Positions 7,272 to 44,466 of a stretch of 64,000 bases of DNA are shown piece after piece (the stretch's first letter is position 1; every line of letters begins with the position of its first letter). The stretch lies in the IMG/VR virus record IMGVR_UViG_3300020578_000006, positions 1 through 64,000 of that record; one strand, given 5' to 3'. The notes beneath the pieces were generated by a model. The model saw nothing but the letters and a program-made list of their open reading frames with translations. It had not been told where the DNA came from and did no database searches. The position numbers were made by a program, and so were the translations under genes.

Positions 7272-7347
7272 TGGTGGGCGTACAAGGATTTGAACCTTGG
7301 ACCAAGGCATTATGAGTGCCCTGCTCTGACCGCTGAGCTATACGCCC
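7272..7347 (-). tRNA. tRNA with CAU anticodon (Ile2 or elongator Met), encoded CCA
   Basis: GGGCGUA acceptor; loop CUCAUAA; 3' ACCA. Confidence 0.9.
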
Positions 7348-14327: not shown

Positions 14328-14333
14328 AAGATT

Positions 14334-14405
14334 TCGCGGGGGTCGGATTTGAACCGACGATCTCCTGGTTATGAGCCAGACGAGTTACCACTTCTCCACC
14401 CCACA
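14334..14405 (-). tRNA. trnfM: initiator tRNA-fMet(CAU)
   Basis: Near-identical to bacterial fMet tRNA (GGGGUGGAG...CUCAUAA...GUCGGUUCAAAUCCG); U1.G72; anticodon stem UCUGG/CCAGG. Confidence 0.9.
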
Positions 14406-14436
14406 ATATATATATTAATATATATTAAATAATACA

Positions 14437-21742: not shown

Positions 21743-21825
21743 GCCGGGGTGCCAGAGTGGTCAAATGGACCTGATTTGTAATCAGGCGCGAAAGCTACGC
21801 AGGTTCAAATCCTGTCCCCGGCCCA
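21743..21825 (+). tRNA. trnY: tRNA-Tyr(GUA)
   Basis: CUGA-UUGUAA-UCAG anticodon arm; long variable arm GC-GAAA-GC. Confidence 0.9.
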
Positions 21826-23569: not shown

Positions 23570-23640
23570 GGTTTGGGGTTATCCTTTTTTCTTTTATGAA
23601 AGAAAACCCCGCTTATTTTCGAATATGATACCGGGCATTT

Positions 23641-23731
23641 GGCCCGGTAGTTTAATGGTAAAACAGCAGACTTATACTCTGTATTATCGCCAGATTAGCG
23701 TAAAATGTAGGTTCGACTCCTACCCGGGCTA
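23641..23731 (+). tRNA. trnI: tRNA-Ile(UAU) with long variable arm
   Basis: GGCCCGG/CCGGGCU acceptor, GCAGA-CUUAUAC-UCUGU, 24-nt variable region with CGC/GCG stem, GUAGG-UUCGACU-CCUAC T-arm. Confidence 0.85.
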
Positions 23732-23735
23732 GTGT

Positions 23736-24530
23736 ATGATTATAGATTGCTTTACATACAATAATGAAGAGGAGATGCTCAATTTTAGACTTCATGAATT
23801 AAATCACGTAGTAGACAAATTTGTTTTATTGGAAAGCCCTTACTACCATCAAGGCGGTTTAAAACAGAATACCTTTGAAAAGCATAAAGTGAAGTTTATA
23901 CAATTTAAAAATAAGATTGTACATATCGTTCATACTGCCAAGCCTCATCCCAATCCCTGGATTAATGAAAAGAATTTAAGAAATGTTGCTACAACCGGTT
24001 TAAAGTATATTAAACCGAGTTCTACTGATTATGTAGGTATATCAGATATTGATGAGATACCTGACCCTCTTGCTCTTGAAAAGTTAAAAGAGATAAAGCC
24101 TAAGATTTTACTTGGTTTTATGCATAATTTTTATTACTATAATATTAATTGTAGGAAGAGAAATAAGTGGTTTGGTTCTGTATTTGGAGATTTAGATAGT
24201 ATATATTACCATTTTAATAATGATTTTAATGAGCTAAGACATGCATTAAAACGGGGAGATTCAAATTTAAAAGTGGCGGGGCTCAAAACATTTTCTGCAG
24301 GGGGTTGGCATTTTTCTTATTTTGGTACTTTAGATAAAATAATAGAGAAATTAGAAAGCTTTACTCATTCTGAATATAATAAATCTGAGTATAAGAACAA
24401 AGACAATATTATAAAGGCTATTAGAGAAGGTAAAGATTTGTTTAACCGGGGTGGAAATGAAGATTTGAATATAATAACAGAAACTTACCTTCCAAAGTAC
24501 ACTAATTTGTTGCCAAATATATTTGTATAA
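23736..24530 (+). CDS. glycosyltransferase family 17 (beta-1,4-GlcNAc-transferase III-like)
   Basis: MIIDCFTYNNE...LNHVVDKFVLLES, ISDIDEIP, GGWHFSY motifs. Confidence 0.88.
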   Translation: MIIDCFTYNNEEEMLNFRLHELNHVVDKFVLLESPYYHQGGLKQNTFEKHKVKFIQFKNKIVHIVHTAKPHPNPWINEKNLRNVATTGLKYIKPSSTDYVGISDIDEIPDPLALEKLKEIKPKILLGFMHNFYYYNINCRKRNKWFGSVFGDLDSIYYHFNNDFNELRHALKRGDSNLKVAGLKTFSAGGWHFSYFGTLDKIIEKLESFTHSEYNKSEYKNKDNIIKAIREGKDLFNRGGNEDLNIITETYLPKYTNLLPNIFV

Positions 24531-42651: not shown

Positions 42652-44466
42652 ATGCCTGAGTACGGAAATTCTGATTCTGGACGTGAATCGACATTTGGTC
42701 GTTCGTTAATGAGTTATATTAACTCTAAGCTTCCTTATCAGAGCTATACATCTATTGATACTATAAGTAAACTAAATCCCAAATTTAAAGTATTTCAAGA
42801 TACAGGCAGTAAGAGAACAGAAGCACTAGCCAGACAAAGCATTAGCAGTAATACTGAATATAATAGCTTAGACCCATCCGGCATTATTGGTCTAGATAAC
42901 AATTTCACCCAATACATGTATGCAAATGTGCAACATGACAAAGTATCTAGATTAAGAGACTACAGAACAATGGCATCTTTTTCTGAAGTAGCCGATGCGC
43001 TAGATGAAATATGTGATGATGCAATAAACAAAGATTCAAAAGGCAAAGTAGTTCATGCTAAGTTTCTAGATCTAGATTTAAATGACAAAGACACTACAGT
43101 TCTAGAAGAAGAGTTTCAAAAATATATTCAACATTTTGATTTGTCCCATAAAGGGTGGGAATATTTTAGAACACTACTAGTTGATGGTGAGTTATACTTT
43201 GAACATATTATCCACAAGCAATACGAGGATGAAGGAATATTAGGAGTTATAACTGTACCTAACGAATTTGTTGATCCTATTTTTGGCAATGTACAGAATA
43301 TGATGATTAAGGGCTTCTTGTTAAGAAAGCCAGTTTTTGACAAAAACAACCCTACCAAGATATTGGAATATAAGCTTGTTCCAATGGACAAAAATCAAAT
43401 AACTTATATTAACTCTGGTATATGGAATGAGAACAAGACAATAAGACTTCCGTTCATAGAGAACGCAAGAAGAGCATATAGGCAGATTAGTCTATTAGAA
43501 GATGCGGTCGTAATTTATAGGTTGGCACGAGCACCTGCGCGTTTAATCTTCAATGTAGATGTTGGCAATATGCCTGCACCAAAAGCAGAAGCGTATATGC
43601 GTAAATTAATGAACCAATATTGGTCATCTAAGAGTTTTGATGCGCAGCAAGGCGGAGGGGCTCTTAAAAAATATAACCCACAAAGTATTTTAGATAATTT
43701 CTGGTTTGCAAAGCGCGCTGGTTCTGAAGGTACAGATGTAAGACAATTAGAAGGTGCAAATCAAGCTTGGGGGCTAGAGGAAATGAACTATTTCTTAAAG
43801 AAACTTTATAAGAGCTTAAAGGTACCAGTATCCAGACTTAATGCTGAAACTGGCTACAAAGATGATATGAACATTCTTCGTGAGGAATTAAAATTTGCTA
43901 AATTTATTGTTAGAATGCAGCAGCAATTTGCTGAAGGCTTAAAGAATGGTTTTGTAACGCATTTAAAGCTTAGAAAGCTTTGGGAAAAATTTGATCTTAA
44001 GGAAACTAACATTGATATTGAGTTTAATGTACCAATTAACTTCTTTGAGATGAGAGAGGCACAAAAACAGGAGATCAAATCAAAGACATTCGGTGACATA
44101 ATTCAATCAGCTGATAATATTAGTAAGACATATGCATTAAAGAAATACATGGATTGGACAGATGTAGAAATTCTTGCAAATAGAGAATTTATGAGAAAAG
44201 ATATGGCATTTAGCTGGGAATTAGAGCAAATTAAAGCTGGAGGCCCTAATTGGAAAGAAAATGCTTTAGCGGGTGTTGCTCCAGCAGAAGGTGGTGAAGT
44301 TGGTGGTGCAAGTGTTGGTGGTGGAGCCGCAAGTACATTACCGCCTGCTTTTGGACCTACCCCGGCTGGTGGACCAGAAGGTGGAGTTCCTGCTGAAGGC
44401 GGGCCTGCTCCAGCAGAGGGTGCACCGGGCCCTGCGGCCGGTGGGGCACCACCCCCTACCGGTTAA
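42652..44466 (+). CDS. gp20: T4-like portal vertex protein
   Basis: YRTMA...EVADALDEIC, FRTLLVDGELYF, LLEDAVVIYRLARAPARLIFNVDVGNMP, SILDNFWFAKR, EELKFAKFI; TATAAATA upstream. Confidence 0.97.
   Translation: MPEYGNSDSGRESTFGRSLMSYINSKLPYQSYTSIDTISKLNPKFKVFQDTGSKRTEALARQSISSNTEYNSLDPSGIIGLDNNFTQYMYANVQHDKVSRLRDYRTMASFSEVADALDEICDDAINKDSKGKVVHAKFLDLDLNDKDTTVLEEEFQKYIQHFDLSHKGWEYFRTLLVDGELYFEHIIHKQYEDEGILGVITVPNEFVDPIFGNVQNMMIKGFLLRKPVFDKNNPTKILEYKLVPMDKNQITYINSGIWNENKTIRLPFIENARRAYRQISLLEDAVVIYRLARAPARLIFNVDVGNMPAPKAEAYMRKLMNQYWSSKSFDAQQGGGALKKYNPQSILDNFWFAKRAGSEGTDVRQLEGANQAWGLEEMNYFLKKLYKSLKVPVSRLNAETGYKDDMNILREELKFAKFIVRMQQQFAEGLKNGFVTHLKLRKLWEKFDLKETNIDIEFNVPINFFEMREAQKQEIKSKTFGDIIQSADNISKTYALKKYMDWTDVEILANREFMRKDMAFSWELEQIKAGGPNWKENALAGVAPAEGGEVGGASVGGGAASTLPPAFGPTPAGGPEGGVPAEGGPAPAEGAPGPAAGGAPPPTG

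What the first reader, a model, noticed from the sequence alone, without database searches (positions are those of the whole stretch)
23628..23731. tRNA with UAU anticodon and a long variable arm
Seen: a perfect cloverleaf with UAU, Ile-type elements (A73, C4-G69, U12-A23) and a 24-nt stem-forming variable region. The 5' leader UACCGGGC can pair with the acceptor 5' strand (GCCCGGUA) and so competes with folding. A CAU tRNA is also encoded. Known: bacteria usually read AUA with lysidine-modified CAU (TilS), and Ile tRNAs are short-armed. Inference: TilS-independent AUA decoding for an AT-rich genome, a removable insertion, or mischarging by a V-arm-reading synthetase (Ser/Leu/Tyr) that would recode AUA.
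Basis: partly seen in the sequence, partly recalled or inferred. Interest (0 to 1): 0.62.

Follow-up and report, generated by a model that had tools for sequence, protein, structure and literature searches.

The report
Phage isoleucine tRNA with decoy anticodon arm
This lake-water jumbo phage carries a real AUA-reading isoleucine tRNA from a widespread, apparently undescribed phage family whose extra hairpin copies the anticodon arm of the ordinary isoleucine tRNA, probably so the host's charging enzyme accepts it.

Summary
The tRNA is real. It lies at window 23641-23731 (+), is 91 nt long, has anticodon UAU and a 24-nt variable region, and scores 66 bits against the Rfam tRNA model.

It is not a one-off. 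I collected 103 distinct 88-96-nt tRNA(UAU) genes with very different bodies. Nearly all come from viral contigs, a few from bacterial tRNA arrays. Cultured carriers include Lactobacillus, Synechococcus and Sinorhizobium phages.

All share an extra hairpin with a 4-bp covarying stem and a 7-nt loop (consensus YAGAUWA, usually CAGAUUA), followed by a 5-6-nt linker. That is anticodon-arm geometry, not Leu/Ser/Tyr-type V-arm geometry.

Numbered as an anticodon arm, the hairpin carries G34-A35-U36, A38 and C29-G41. These are the bacterial IleRS determinants of the anticodon branch. It lacks U33 and A37, which decoding needs.

Recoding is rejected. ATA exchanges with ATT/ATC at a synonymous-like rate in related phages (59% ATT/ATC against 5% Leu codons).

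The phage has no IleRS or TilS gene, and E. coli IleRS charges a UAU anticodon at about 1% efficiency. My best, untested explanation is that the hairpin is an IleRS recognition mimic.

The leader hairpin exists and is kept by compensatory changes in two orthologues, but it is specific to this phage lineage.

The parts
23641..23731 (+). tRNA(UAU) gene, 91 nt, CCA not encoded. It has five arms: acceptor, D, anticodon, extra hairpin and T.
   Evidence: ARAGORN; Rfam RF00005 at 66.2 bits; an unsupervised RNAalifold fold of 103 family members returns the same five-arm structure.
23666..23682 (+). True anticodon arm: stem GCAGA/UCUGU and loop CUUAUAC, with anticodon UAU at 23673-23675. U33 and A37 are present. 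Position 29:41 is A-U and position 38 is C, so two minor Ile determinants are missing here.
   Evidence: Sequence. Across the family U33 is 103/103 and A37 is 99/103, while C29-G41 is only 32/103 and A38 is 46/103.
23687..23701 (+). Extra hairpin in the variable region: stem 23687-90 with 23698-701 (three Watson-Crick pairs plus a U.U) and 7-nt loop CAGAUUA at 23691-97, with GAU at 23693-95. Numbered as an anticodon arm it carries C32, A33, G34, A35, U36, U37, A38 and C29-G41.
   Evidence: Four stem pairs covary and the loop is 90-100% conserved. In the unbiased subset of 26: G34 26, A35 25, U36 23, A38 21, C-G at 29:41 23. The motif AGAT occurs in 22/26 long tRNA(UAU) against 2/68 other long tRNAs.
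23702..23706 (+). 5-nt linker between the hairpin and the T-stem. This is the length of a normal class I variable loop.
   Evidence: The 3' linker is 5-6 nt in 102/103 members. In 201 Leu/Ser/Tyr tRNAs from the same loci it is mostly 1-2 nt.
23629..23649 (+). Leader hairpin: leader 23629-36 pairs with tRNA positions 2-9 (23642-49), with loop 23637-41. It cannot coexist with the acceptor stem.
   Evidence: Sequence; the precursor's lowest-energy fold forms it; it is kept by compensatory changes in orthologues L388 and L389; it is not a family-wide trait.
23618..23630 (+). Conserved upstream block TTCGAATATGATA. It is T-loop-like and contains a -10-like TATGAT. Its role is unknown.
   Evidence: It is nearly identical in the three orthologous loci while the flanks diverge. 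The simple sigma-70 scan called no promoter here.
7275..7347 (-). tRNA(CAU) with a G27.U43 pair and encoded CCA; probably a lysidine-dependent tRNA-Ile2. This would be a second AUA decoder in the same phage.
   Evidence: ARAGORN and Rfam; sequence; its only E. coli matches are genes annotated tRNA-Ile.

Best explanation
**Shown.** This is a working-type phage tRNA that reads AUA as isoleucine. It belongs to a large, mostly phage-borne family of tRNA(UAU) genes that carry a second, anticodon-arm-like hairpin between the real anticodon arm and a normal-length variable loop.

**Inferred mechanism.** A U34 anticodon is a poor substrate for ordinary bacterial IleRS. The phage brings no IleRS or TilS of its own. 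The extra hairpin presents the features IleRS reads on the major tRNA-Ile: G34, A35, U36, A38 and a C-G pair at 29:41. This would restore charging with isoleucine by the host enzyme.

The hairpin lacks U33 and A37, so it cannot decode. The UAU arm, with U33 and A37, does the decoding on the ribosome, where the hairpin is tolerated like a class II V-arm.

Both hairpins start at the same junction and have similar dimensions. One is tied to the D-stem, the other to the T-stem through a 5-6-nt linker. Either could in principle occupy the anticodon-arm position when IleRS binds.

**Not shown.** Charging, modification and the three-dimensional arrangement are all untested.
For: - **Real tRNA.**
- **A family, found two independent ways.** A scan for a UAU loop, a long spacer and a T-arm gave 26 long tRNA(UAU) genes, 22 of them with AGAT in the V region; only 2 of 68 other long tRNAs have it. 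The reverse scan, for the V-loop motif plus a T-arm with no anticodon specified, gave 87 tRNA(UAU) among 121 viral hits and no genuine other anticodon.
- **Structure.** Four V-stem pairs covary. Overall, 89.7% of cells are paired against 56% in shuffles. RNAalifold finds the hairpin unaided.
- **Mimicry.** One search gives the numbers. The determinant list comes from PMC9976931 Table 1.
- **Geometry.** A 7-nt loop occurs in 2/201 class II controls. The 3' linker is 5-6 nt in 102/103 members.
- **Need.** E. coli IleRS charges UAU at 1.1% of LAU efficiency (PMC3575796). The phage genome has no PF00133 or PF01171 match.
- **ATA means Ile.**
- **Ile-type body.** A73 in 82/83 members; the window tRNA has C4-G69 and U12-A23.
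- **No linked partner protein.** The commonest neighbour cluster is in 13/101 loci and is an HNH endonuclease. This points to a host factor.
- **Precedent.** Engineered tRNAs tolerate hairpin aptamers in the V-arm (abstract of PMC7590224).
Against: - No aminoacylation, expression or structural data exist. No RNA run holds the locus.
- From my own knowledge of class Ia synthetase-tRNA complexes, the V-arm of tRNA-Leu points away from LeuRS. A cis contact with IleRS would therefore need an unusual arrangement.
- The hairpin has U, not A, at position 37, so it lacks t6A37, a strong determinant for bacterial IleRS.
- C29-G41 is only a minor E. coli determinant. It is present in just 46% of phage tRNA-Ile(GAU) anticodon arms, so that match may be over-read.
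- The predicted relaxation of the true anticodon arm, compared with short phage tRNA(UAU), was not significant (p = 0.13 and 0.06).
- Semele's loop has GAA, not GAU.
- Short phage tRNA(UAU) genes without the hairpin are common (89 found), so the hairpin is not obligatory.
- Most of the 103 sequences came from a scan that required CAGATTA. Loop statistics should therefore be taken from the unbiased 26.
Confidence: 0.4

Rival explanations
1. The hairpin is a handle for a different host factor, for example an enzyme that modifies U34 or its neighbours so that UAU reads AUA but not AUG. This would be analogous to the intron-dependent pseudouridylation of eukaryotic tRNA-Ile(UAU).
For: Unmodified UAU cannot distinguish AUA from AUG on E. 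coli ribosomes (PMC3575796). Eukaryotic tRNA-Ile(UAU) needs extra RNA, its intron, for modification (PMC9602550 and PMC11912914, listed). The conserved loop and the near-invariant C-G pair show sequence-specific recognition by something. No linked phage protein was found.
Against: No candidate enzyme is known. This idea does not explain why the loop centre is precisely the Ile anticodon GAU with A38 and C32.
Confidence: 0.2
2. The hairpin is a counter-defence feature. It either shields the tRNA from host tRNA-cleaving defence nucleases or acts as a decoy for a factor that targets the tRNA-Ile(GAU) anticodon loop.
For: Phage tRNAs are known to counter tRNA-targeting defences (my own knowledge; bacterial Schlafen paper PMC13056530, listed). 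The family is overwhelmingly phage-borne. The hairpin looks like a tRNA-Ile anticodon arm that cannot decode.
Against: I know of no defence nuclease specific for tRNA-Ile. A decoy would not need to be tied exclusively to the UAU anticodon, yet no other anticodon carries the module.
Confidence: 0.12
3. The long arm makes LeuRS, SerRS or TyrRS charge the tRNA, so that AUA is recoded or made ambiguous, as with nematode nev-tRNA-Ile(UAU), which is charged with Leu.
For: It has A73 and a long variable region. nev-tRNA (PMC3333845) and allo-tRNA(UAU) (PMC5389517) are precedents.
Against: ATA sites exchange with ATT/ATC at 59% and 49% in the two middle identity bins. Leu codons are about 5%, Ser at most 0.5% and Tyr at most 0.3%, the same as at ATT and ATC sites. 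TTA and CTA sites stay 72-90% Leu. The D-arm is class I. The loop is 7 nt and the 3' linker 5-6 nt, unlike class II tRNAs. The acceptor/T configuration is 7/5, not 8/4. A35 excludes TyrRS anticodon recognition.
Confidence: 0.03
4. The 24-nt region is a removable insertion (intron-like) or a neutral expansion with no function in the mature tRNA.
For: It interrupts an otherwise class I tRNA-Ile-like body. Homing endonuclease genes are frequent neighbours.
Against: The loop is conserved and the stem covaries across about 100 tRNAs whose bodies have diverged almost completely. It is far too small for a group I intron, and bacteria lack the archaeal splicing endonuclease (my own knowledge). The linker lengths are also constrained.
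Confidence: 0.05
5. Both hairpins decode: one tRNA reads AUA through UAU and AUC/AUU through GAU.
For: The second hairpin has the dimensions of an anticodon arm and carries GAU at loop positions 3-5.
Against: It has A, not the universal U, at position 33 (23/26), and usually U, not a purine, at position 37. Its stem is only 4 conserved base pairs.
Confidence: 0.02

Closest known systems
Bacterial tRNA-Ile(UAU) of TilS-less species (Mycoplasma mobile and others; PMC3575796, PMC3919564)
   Same: It has the same unmodifiable-C-free strategy: a UAU anticodon reads AUA, with an Ile-type body and A73.
   Different: Those are ordinary 76-nt class I tRNAs. There the enzyme adapted (Arg865 in M. mobile IleRS) and the ribosome avoids AUG misreading. 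Here the tRNA itself carries an extra hairpin and works in TilS-containing hosts, alongside a probable tRNA-Ile2(CAU).
Nematode nev-tRNA-Ile(UAU) (PMC3333845, PMC4300185)
   Same: It combines a UAU anticodon with a long extra arm and A73.
   Different: nev-tRNAs derive from tRNA-Leu, have class II architecture and are charged with Leu. Here the body is Ile-like and class I, the arm has a 7-nt GAU loop, and ATA behaves as Ile.
allo-tRNAs with UAU anticodon (PMC5389517)
   Same: They have a long variable arm, UAU is a predominant anticodon, and they occur in metagenomes, including Acidobacteria and phages.
   Different: allo-tRNAs have 8/4 or 9/3 acceptor/T-stem configurations and serine-type identity. 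This family has 7/5 with A73-CCA.
Class II tRNAs (Leu, Ser, Tyr)
   Same: A stem-loop sits between the anticodon arm and the T-arm, and the ribosome tolerates it.
   Different: Class II V-arms mostly have 3-5-nt loops (4 nt in 132/201 controls), 1-2-nt 3' linkers and a 3-bp D-stem. Here the loop is 7 nt, the linker 5-6 nt and the D-stem 4 bp.
tRNA-Ile2 with lysidine (TilS system)
   Same: It does the same job of reading AUA. The window tRNA shares G27.U43, C4-G69 and C5-G68. From my own knowledge these are TilS recognition elements of E. coli tRNA-Ile2, which suggests the body descends from a tRNA-Ile2.
   Different: It has U34, so it needs no TilS, and it has the extra hairpin.
Engineered aptamer-tagged tRNAs (PMC7590224)
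   Same: A protein-binding hairpin sits in the V-arm of a translationally active tRNA.
   Different: Those are synthetic. This would be a natural counterpart whose 'aptamer' resembles an anticodon arm.

Membership tests
tRNA (Rfam RF00005) | Full-length match to the covariance model above the gathering score | tested here: met
   66.2 bits against a cut-off of 29, covering model positions 1-71, with the 21-nt insert placed in the variable region.
Bacterial tRNA-Ile (identity set of PMC9976931 Table 1) | Acceptor and core determinants: A73, C4-G69, U12-A23 | tested here: met
   All three are present in the window tRNA. Across the family: A73 82/83, C4-G69 49/83, U12-A23 59/103.
Bacterial tRNA-Ile (identity set of PMC9976931 Table 1) | Anticodon-branch determinants on the true anticodon arm: G34 or lysidine-34, A35, U36, A37, A38, C29-G41 | tested here: not met
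   The true arm has U34, C38 and A29-U41. Only A35, U36 and A37 are present. On the extra hairpin, G34, A35, U36, A38 and C29-G41 are present but A37 is not.
Bacterial tRNA-Ile (identity set of PMC9976931 Table 1) | Charged with isoleucine by IleRS | not testable with these tools
   Indirect evidence only: ATA behaves as an Ile codon.
Class II tRNA (Leu/Ser/Tyr type) | Long V-arm with a short loop and a 1-2-nt 3' linker, plus a class II D-arm | tested here: not met
   The variable region is long (24 nt), but the loop is 7 nt, the 3' linker is 5 nt and the D-stem is 4 bp with a 7-nt loop. Controls: a 7-nt loop in 2/201 and a linker of 5 nt or more in 4/201.
allo-tRNA | 8/4 or 9/3 acceptor/T-stem configuration | tested here: not met
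   It has a 7-bp acceptor and a 5-bp T-stem. Members with encoded CCA fix the register as 7 bp + A73 + CCA.
nev-tRNA-like recoding tRNA (AUA read as Leu) | ATA codons sit at positions that are Leu (or otherwise non-Ile) in homologues | tested here: not met
   ATA sites are 81% Ile-box codons (59% ATT/ATC plus 23% ATA) and 5% Leu in 80-95%-identical relatives. This profile matches that of ATT sites.
Intron-containing tRNA | The insert is a group I intron or a bulge-helix-bulge intron and is absent from the mature RNA | tested here: inconclusive
   At 24 nt it is too small for a group I intron, and Rfam finds no intron family here. Conservation of the loop and stem argues for a mature function. 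The mature RNA was not observed, because no RNA runs hold the locus.

The most novel reading that the evidence does not exclude
This is a natural 'two-headed' tRNA in which charging and decoding are split between two anticodon-like arms. The host IleRS reads a non-decoding GAU decoy arm to attach isoleucine, and the ribosome reads the UAU arm. Phages would thereby smuggle in an AUA decoder that bypasses both TilS and the synthetase's rejection of U34. The module has spread among phages of Firmicutes, Cyanobacteria, Proteobacteria and into acidobacterial tRNA arrays.
Probability: 0.3. Interest if true: 0.9.

Novelty: new variant of a known kind. Interest (0 to 1): 0.68.

Why it matters
- **tRNA identity.** tRNA identity is normally written on the same anticodon the ribosome reads. 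A tRNA that carries a separate, non-decoding copy of the identity signal would be a new solution to the AUA/AUG problem. It would also be a new way for viruses to supply a decoder that the host synthetase would otherwise reject.
- **A design principle.** An identity 'tag' in the variable arm would be useful for engineering orthogonal or reassigned tRNAs.
- **Annotation.** Some genomes already label these genes plain 'tRNA-Ile'. Others leave them unannotated (LpeD, Lpa804, DSL-LC02). ARAGORN mis-called one as tRNA-Gly (L063) and a degenerate Semele paralogue as tRNA-Tyr. Recognising the family will improve phage tRNA annotation.
- **Testability.** Members exist in cultured phage-host pairs, so the hypothesis can be tested directly.
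- **What is settled.** The more dramatic reading, a recoded AUA, is ruled out for this phage.

Tried and rejected
- **Recoding of AUA to Leu, Ser or Tyr.** Rejected by the codon-substitution analysis against 44 related loci.
- **Phage-encoded IleRS or TilS.** None found in the 229.7-kb genome.
- **A dedicated partner protein encoded nearby.** ORFs of 101 family loci were clustered. The commonest clusters are HNH endonucleases (13 and 10 loci) and an RNase H-like protein (12 loci). None is a tRNA enzyme.
- **Leader-acceptor pairing as a family trait.** Rejected: the mean best helix is 4.49 for the family against 4.52 for 1,366 control tRNAs.
- **The tRNA replaces TilS in the bacteria that carry it.** Rejected: all four genomes tested have TilS above the cut-off.
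- **Other anticodons with the same hairpin.** The apparent cases were chance placements of the motif inside anticodon arms, or an ARAGORN mis-call (L063 is a UAU member).
- **E. coli phage ESCO49 as a member.** Rejected: its tRNA-Ile is 76 nt, and the BLAST hit covered only the T-arm.
- **Identity elements relaxed on the true arm relative to short phage tRNA(UAU).** Only a weak, non-significant trend.
- **Expression evidence.** No RNA run holds the locus.
- **Plasmid collection.** No match.
- **Literature.** Five full-text searches found no description of this family or its loop motif. The library covers open-access papers only.
- **Sigma-70 promoter and terminator scan around the gene.** Nothing called at the leader.
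- **Not used.** The large protein searches, structure prediction and complex prediction were not needed.

Full report
**The object**

The window is the first 64 kb of a complete 229,717-bp IMG/VR virus record. It is a T4-like jumbo phage with a Gp20-type portal protein at 42652-44466. Its G+C content is about 34%. It recurs in more than 20 lake-water DNA metagenomes.

ARAGORN and Rfam both find eight tRNAs, all inside the window. They are Glu(UUC), Leu(UAA), Arg(UCU), Thr(UGU), Gln(UUG), two CAU tRNAs and the one in question, so the set reads A-ending codons or AUG.

The flagged gene lies at 23641-23731 (+). It matches the full tRNA model at 66.2 bits, and the aligner places a 21-nt insert in the variable region. 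Read directly, it has these features:
- a 7-bp acceptor stem with a G1.U72 wobble, then A73
- C4-G69 and U12-A23
- a class I D-arm (4-bp stem, 7-nt loop)
- an anticodon arm with loop CUUAUAC
- a 24-nt variable region at 23683-23706
- a standard T-arm

The stated start, 23628, belongs to the leader.

**It belongs to a family**

BLAST against cultured phages found one full-length relative. This is the annotated 91-nt tRNA-Ile of Lactobacillus phage Semele, which has a compensatory change in the extra stem.

I then scanned IMG/VR with a pattern that specified only a UAU loop, a long spacer and a T-arm. ARAGORN found 26 tRNA(UAU) genes of 88-95 nt among the loci returned. Their acceptor stems, D-arms and anticodon stems differ widely. 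Even so, 22 of the 26 have AGAT in the variable region, against 2 of 68 other long-armed tRNAs from the same loci. One of those two exceptions turned out to be a mis-called family member.

The reverse scan specified the loop motif plus a T-arm and left the anticodon free.
- In viral contigs it returned 121 hits. Of these, 87 were tRNA(UAU). The rest were not called as tRNAs or were chance placements of the motif inside anticodon arms.
- In 596 Gb of bacterial and archaeal genomes, 93 of 120 hits were not tRNAs. Only 7 were long tRNA(UAU) genes.

The cellular copies lie in four Pyrinomonadaceae assemblies, a Ruegeria isolate and two other metagenome-assembled genomes. The acidobacterial copies and the one in an unclassified metagenome-assembled genome (L326) sit in dense tRNA arrays of 14-21 tRNAs, while the Ruegeria locus holds only two tRNAs. 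The four genomes tested all have TilS.

Cultured carriers that I confirmed by sequence:
- Synechococcus phage SynMITS9220M01
- Sinorhizobium phage Phosso
- Lactobacillus phages Semele, LpeD and Lpa804
- Levilactobacillus phage ENFP1

**Anatomy of the extra arm**

I aligned 103 distinct members (A3). An unsupervised RNAalifold fold returns five arms, including a 4-bp stem around a 7-nt loop in the variable region.

Explicit pair counting shows that the four stem pairs covary. One pair, for example, is G-C in 53 sequences, U-A in 20, A-U in 15 and C-G in 10. Across the whole structure 89.7% of cells are paired, against 56% in shuffles and 35-48% when the pairing partners are slid.

The loop is CAGAUUA in most members. 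Most rows came from the scan that required that motif, so I rely on the 26 sequences found without it. Numbering the hairpin like an anticodon arm gives:

| Position | Count in the unbiased 26 |
|---|---|
| 32 | C 20, U 6 |
| 33 | A 23 |
| 34 | G 26 |
| 35 | A 25 |
| 36 | U 23 |
| 37 | U 16, A 6 |
| 38 | A 21 |
| pair 29:41 | C-G 23 |

The bacterial Ile determinants in the anticodon branch are C29-G41, G34 (or modified C34), A35, U36, t6A37 and A38 (PMC9976931 Table 1). The hairpin therefore carries all of them except A37. It also lacks U33. Those two missing positions are the ones a loop needs in order to decode.

The real anticodon arm shows the opposite pattern. U33 and A37 are invariant or nearly so, while C29-G41 occurs in only 7/26 and A38 in 10/26.

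The geometry is also unlike a Leu/Ser/Tyr V-arm. A 7-nt loop occurs in 2 of 201 class II controls. The 3' linker is 5-6 nt in 102/103 members, against mostly 1-2 nt in controls. A 5-6-nt linker is the length of an ordinary variable loop.

The layout is therefore: D-arm, UAU arm, 2-4 nt, GAU arm, a normal variable loop, then the T-arm.

**What AUA means in this phage**

ATA is used 1,867 times and makes up 39% of Ile-box codons.

I aligned the structural-module proteins of this phage to 44 related loci with 51-100% portal identity. For each codon I tabulated what the relatives have at the aligned position.

| Codon here | Identity bin | ATT/ATC | ATA | Leu | Ser | Tyr |
|---|---|---|---|---|---|---|
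| ATA | 80-95% | 59% | 23% | 4.9% | 0.5% | 0% |
| ATT | 80-95% | 71% | 17% | 2.0% | 0.2% | 0% |
| TTA / CTA | 80-95% | 4.3% / 0.9% | 1.5% / 1.4% | 90% | 0% / 0.9% | 0.2% / 0% |

The 60-80% bin and the bin below 60% show the same picture. ATA is therefore synonymous with ATT and ATC in this lineage. At least two of the relatives also carry the long tRNA. Recoding by a V-arm-reading synthetase is rejected.

The caveats are that rows from related contigs are not independent, and that a low level of ambiguous decoding cannot be excluded this way.

**Why a hairpin might be needed**

The phage has no IleRS-family gene and no TilS-type gene. The tRNA must therefore be charged by the host IleRS.

E. 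coli IleRS charges a UAU version of tRNA-Ile2 at 1.1% of the native efficiency, which is 360-fold below the synthetic LAU form. That tRNA also cannot tell AUA from AUG on E. coli ribosomes. M. mobile solved the first problem by changing its IleRS (PMC3575796).

A phage cannot change the host enzyme, but it can change its tRNA. The extra arm is a non-decoding copy of the arm that IleRS normally reads. The most economical reading is that it restores recognition by IleRS.

No protein family recurs next to these genes except homing endonucleases. It also suggests how the gene spreads between phages.

**Limits of that inference**

Nothing here shows charging, expression or a contact with IleRS. The specific weaknesses are:
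- The hairpin lacks t6A37.
- C29-G41 is a minor determinant known from E. coli and is present in only 46% of phage tRNA-Ile(GAU) anticodon arms. The hairpin's C-G is more conserved than that (p = 0.0004). This shows specific recognition, but not necessarily by IleRS.
- I predicted that the true arm would be more relaxed than in short phage tRNA(UAU). The data show only a non-significant trend (40% against 29%, and 57% against 42%; p = 0.13 and 0.06).
- Class Ia synthetases approach the tRNA from the side away from the V-arm (my own knowledge). The model therefore needs either an alternative stacking of the two arms or an unusual contact.
- Semele has GAA in place of GAU.

I put the mechanism at about 0.35-0.4. 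The main rivals are a handle for a modification or fidelity factor, and a counter-defence role.

**The leader**

Leader bases 23629-36 pair with tRNA bases 23642-49 over 8 bp, and the modelled precursor prefers this hairpin to the acceptor stem.

In orthologous loci of relatives with 74% and 78% portal identity, the acceptor stem has changed, and the leader has changed with it so that 6 bp are kept. The block TTCGAATAYGATA just upstream is conserved.

Among 1,366 control tRNAs, a leader-acceptor helix of at least 8 bp occurs in 1.5% and one of at least 6 bp in 16%. The tRNA(UAU) family as a whole is no different from the controls.

The hairpin is therefore a lineage-specific feature and probably under selection. 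Possible roles are timing of precursor processing or promoter-proximal structure. It is separate from the V-arm story and its role remains open.

**Other points**

- The CAU tRNA at 7275-7347 has a G27.U43 pair and encoded CCA. It matches only E. coli genes annotated tRNA-Ile. The phage probably carries both a lysidine-type and a UAU-type AUA decoder.
- The CAU tRNA at 14333-14406 looks like an initiator tRNA.

**Novelty**

Individual genes are already annotated 'tRNA-Ile' in a few phage records. I found no paper describing the family, its loop motif or the mimicry, but the library holds open-access papers only.

The closest described entities differ in defining features:
- nev-tRNA-Ile(UAU): a Leu-type tRNA that is charged with Leu
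- allo-tRNA(UAU): 8/4 or 9/3 structure
- class I tRNA-Ile(UAU) of TilS-less bacteria: no extra arm

I file it as a new variant of a known kind. There is a realistic chance that it embodies a new principle, the separation of the identity signal from the decoding anticodon.

Noticed in passing
window 21743-21823 (+): A second oversized tRNA: tRNA(UGU), 81 nt. It has a class-II-like D-arm (3-bp stem, 11-nt loop), a 12-nt variable region with a GAAA-capped mini-stem, and discriminator C. Genes about 77% similar are annotated tRNA-Thr in T5-like Salmonella and Escherichia phages. ACA codons behave as Thr.
   Followed up: partly
window 7275-7347 (-) and 14333-14406 (-): Two CAU tRNAs. The first looks like a lysidine-dependent tRNA-Ile2: it has G27.U43 and encoded CCA, and its only E. 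coli matches are annotated tRNA-Ile. The second is initiator-like, with a U1.G72 pair and an fMet-like body.
   Followed up: partly
window 23618-23630 (+); L388 and L389: The block TTCGAATAYGATA upstream of the tRNA is conserved in three orthologous loci. It resembles a T-loop followed by the 3' strands of a tRNA, and it contains a -10-like TATGAT. It could be a remnant of a tRNA 3' half or a promoter element.
   Followed up: partly
L001:1383-1473 (Lactobacillus phage Semele): This neighbouring 91-nt gene is annotated tRNA-Tyr, and ARAGORN calls it Tyr(ata). It has the same anticodon stem as the adjacent long tRNA(UAU) but a 5-nt loop, AAUAC, and a different long arm. It is probably a degenerate paralogue with a 2-nt loop deletion.
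   Followed up: partly
L001:1628-2272; L397:614-672; L398:550-690; family loci: HNH homing endonuclease genes lie just downstream of the long tRNA(UAU) in Semele, Phosso and LpeD. HNH proteins are also the commonest neighbour clusters across 101 family loci (13 and 10 loci). This suggests endonuclease-assisted spread of the gene.
   Followed up: partly
L283, L342, L329, L224, L229 (Acidobacteriota assemblies): Four Pyrinomonadaceae species share one long tRNA(UAU) with a C1-G72 pair and no encoded CCA. In L283 and L342 it lies in arrays of 19-21 tRNA genes within 8 kb, on 511-kb and 396-kb contigs. These genomes also have TilS.
   Followed up: partly
family alignment A3, columns 2 and 97: The first acceptor pair is a G1.U72 wobble in 50 of 83 members, including the window tRNA, and A1-U72 in 10 more. 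This is an unusual, recurrent feature that I cannot explain.
   Followed up: no
window 23736-24530 (+): The gene that starts 5 nt after the tRNA encodes a family 17 glycosyltransferase (PF04724, E = 3e-27), which is uncommon in phages.
   Followed up: no
L063:2319-2418 (-): ARAGORN calls a 100-nt tRNA-Gly(ccc) here. The real anticodon loop is CUUAUAC, and the variable region holds a 5-bp stem with loop UAGAUAA. It is a mis-called member of the same family, with an even longer arm.
   Followed up: yes
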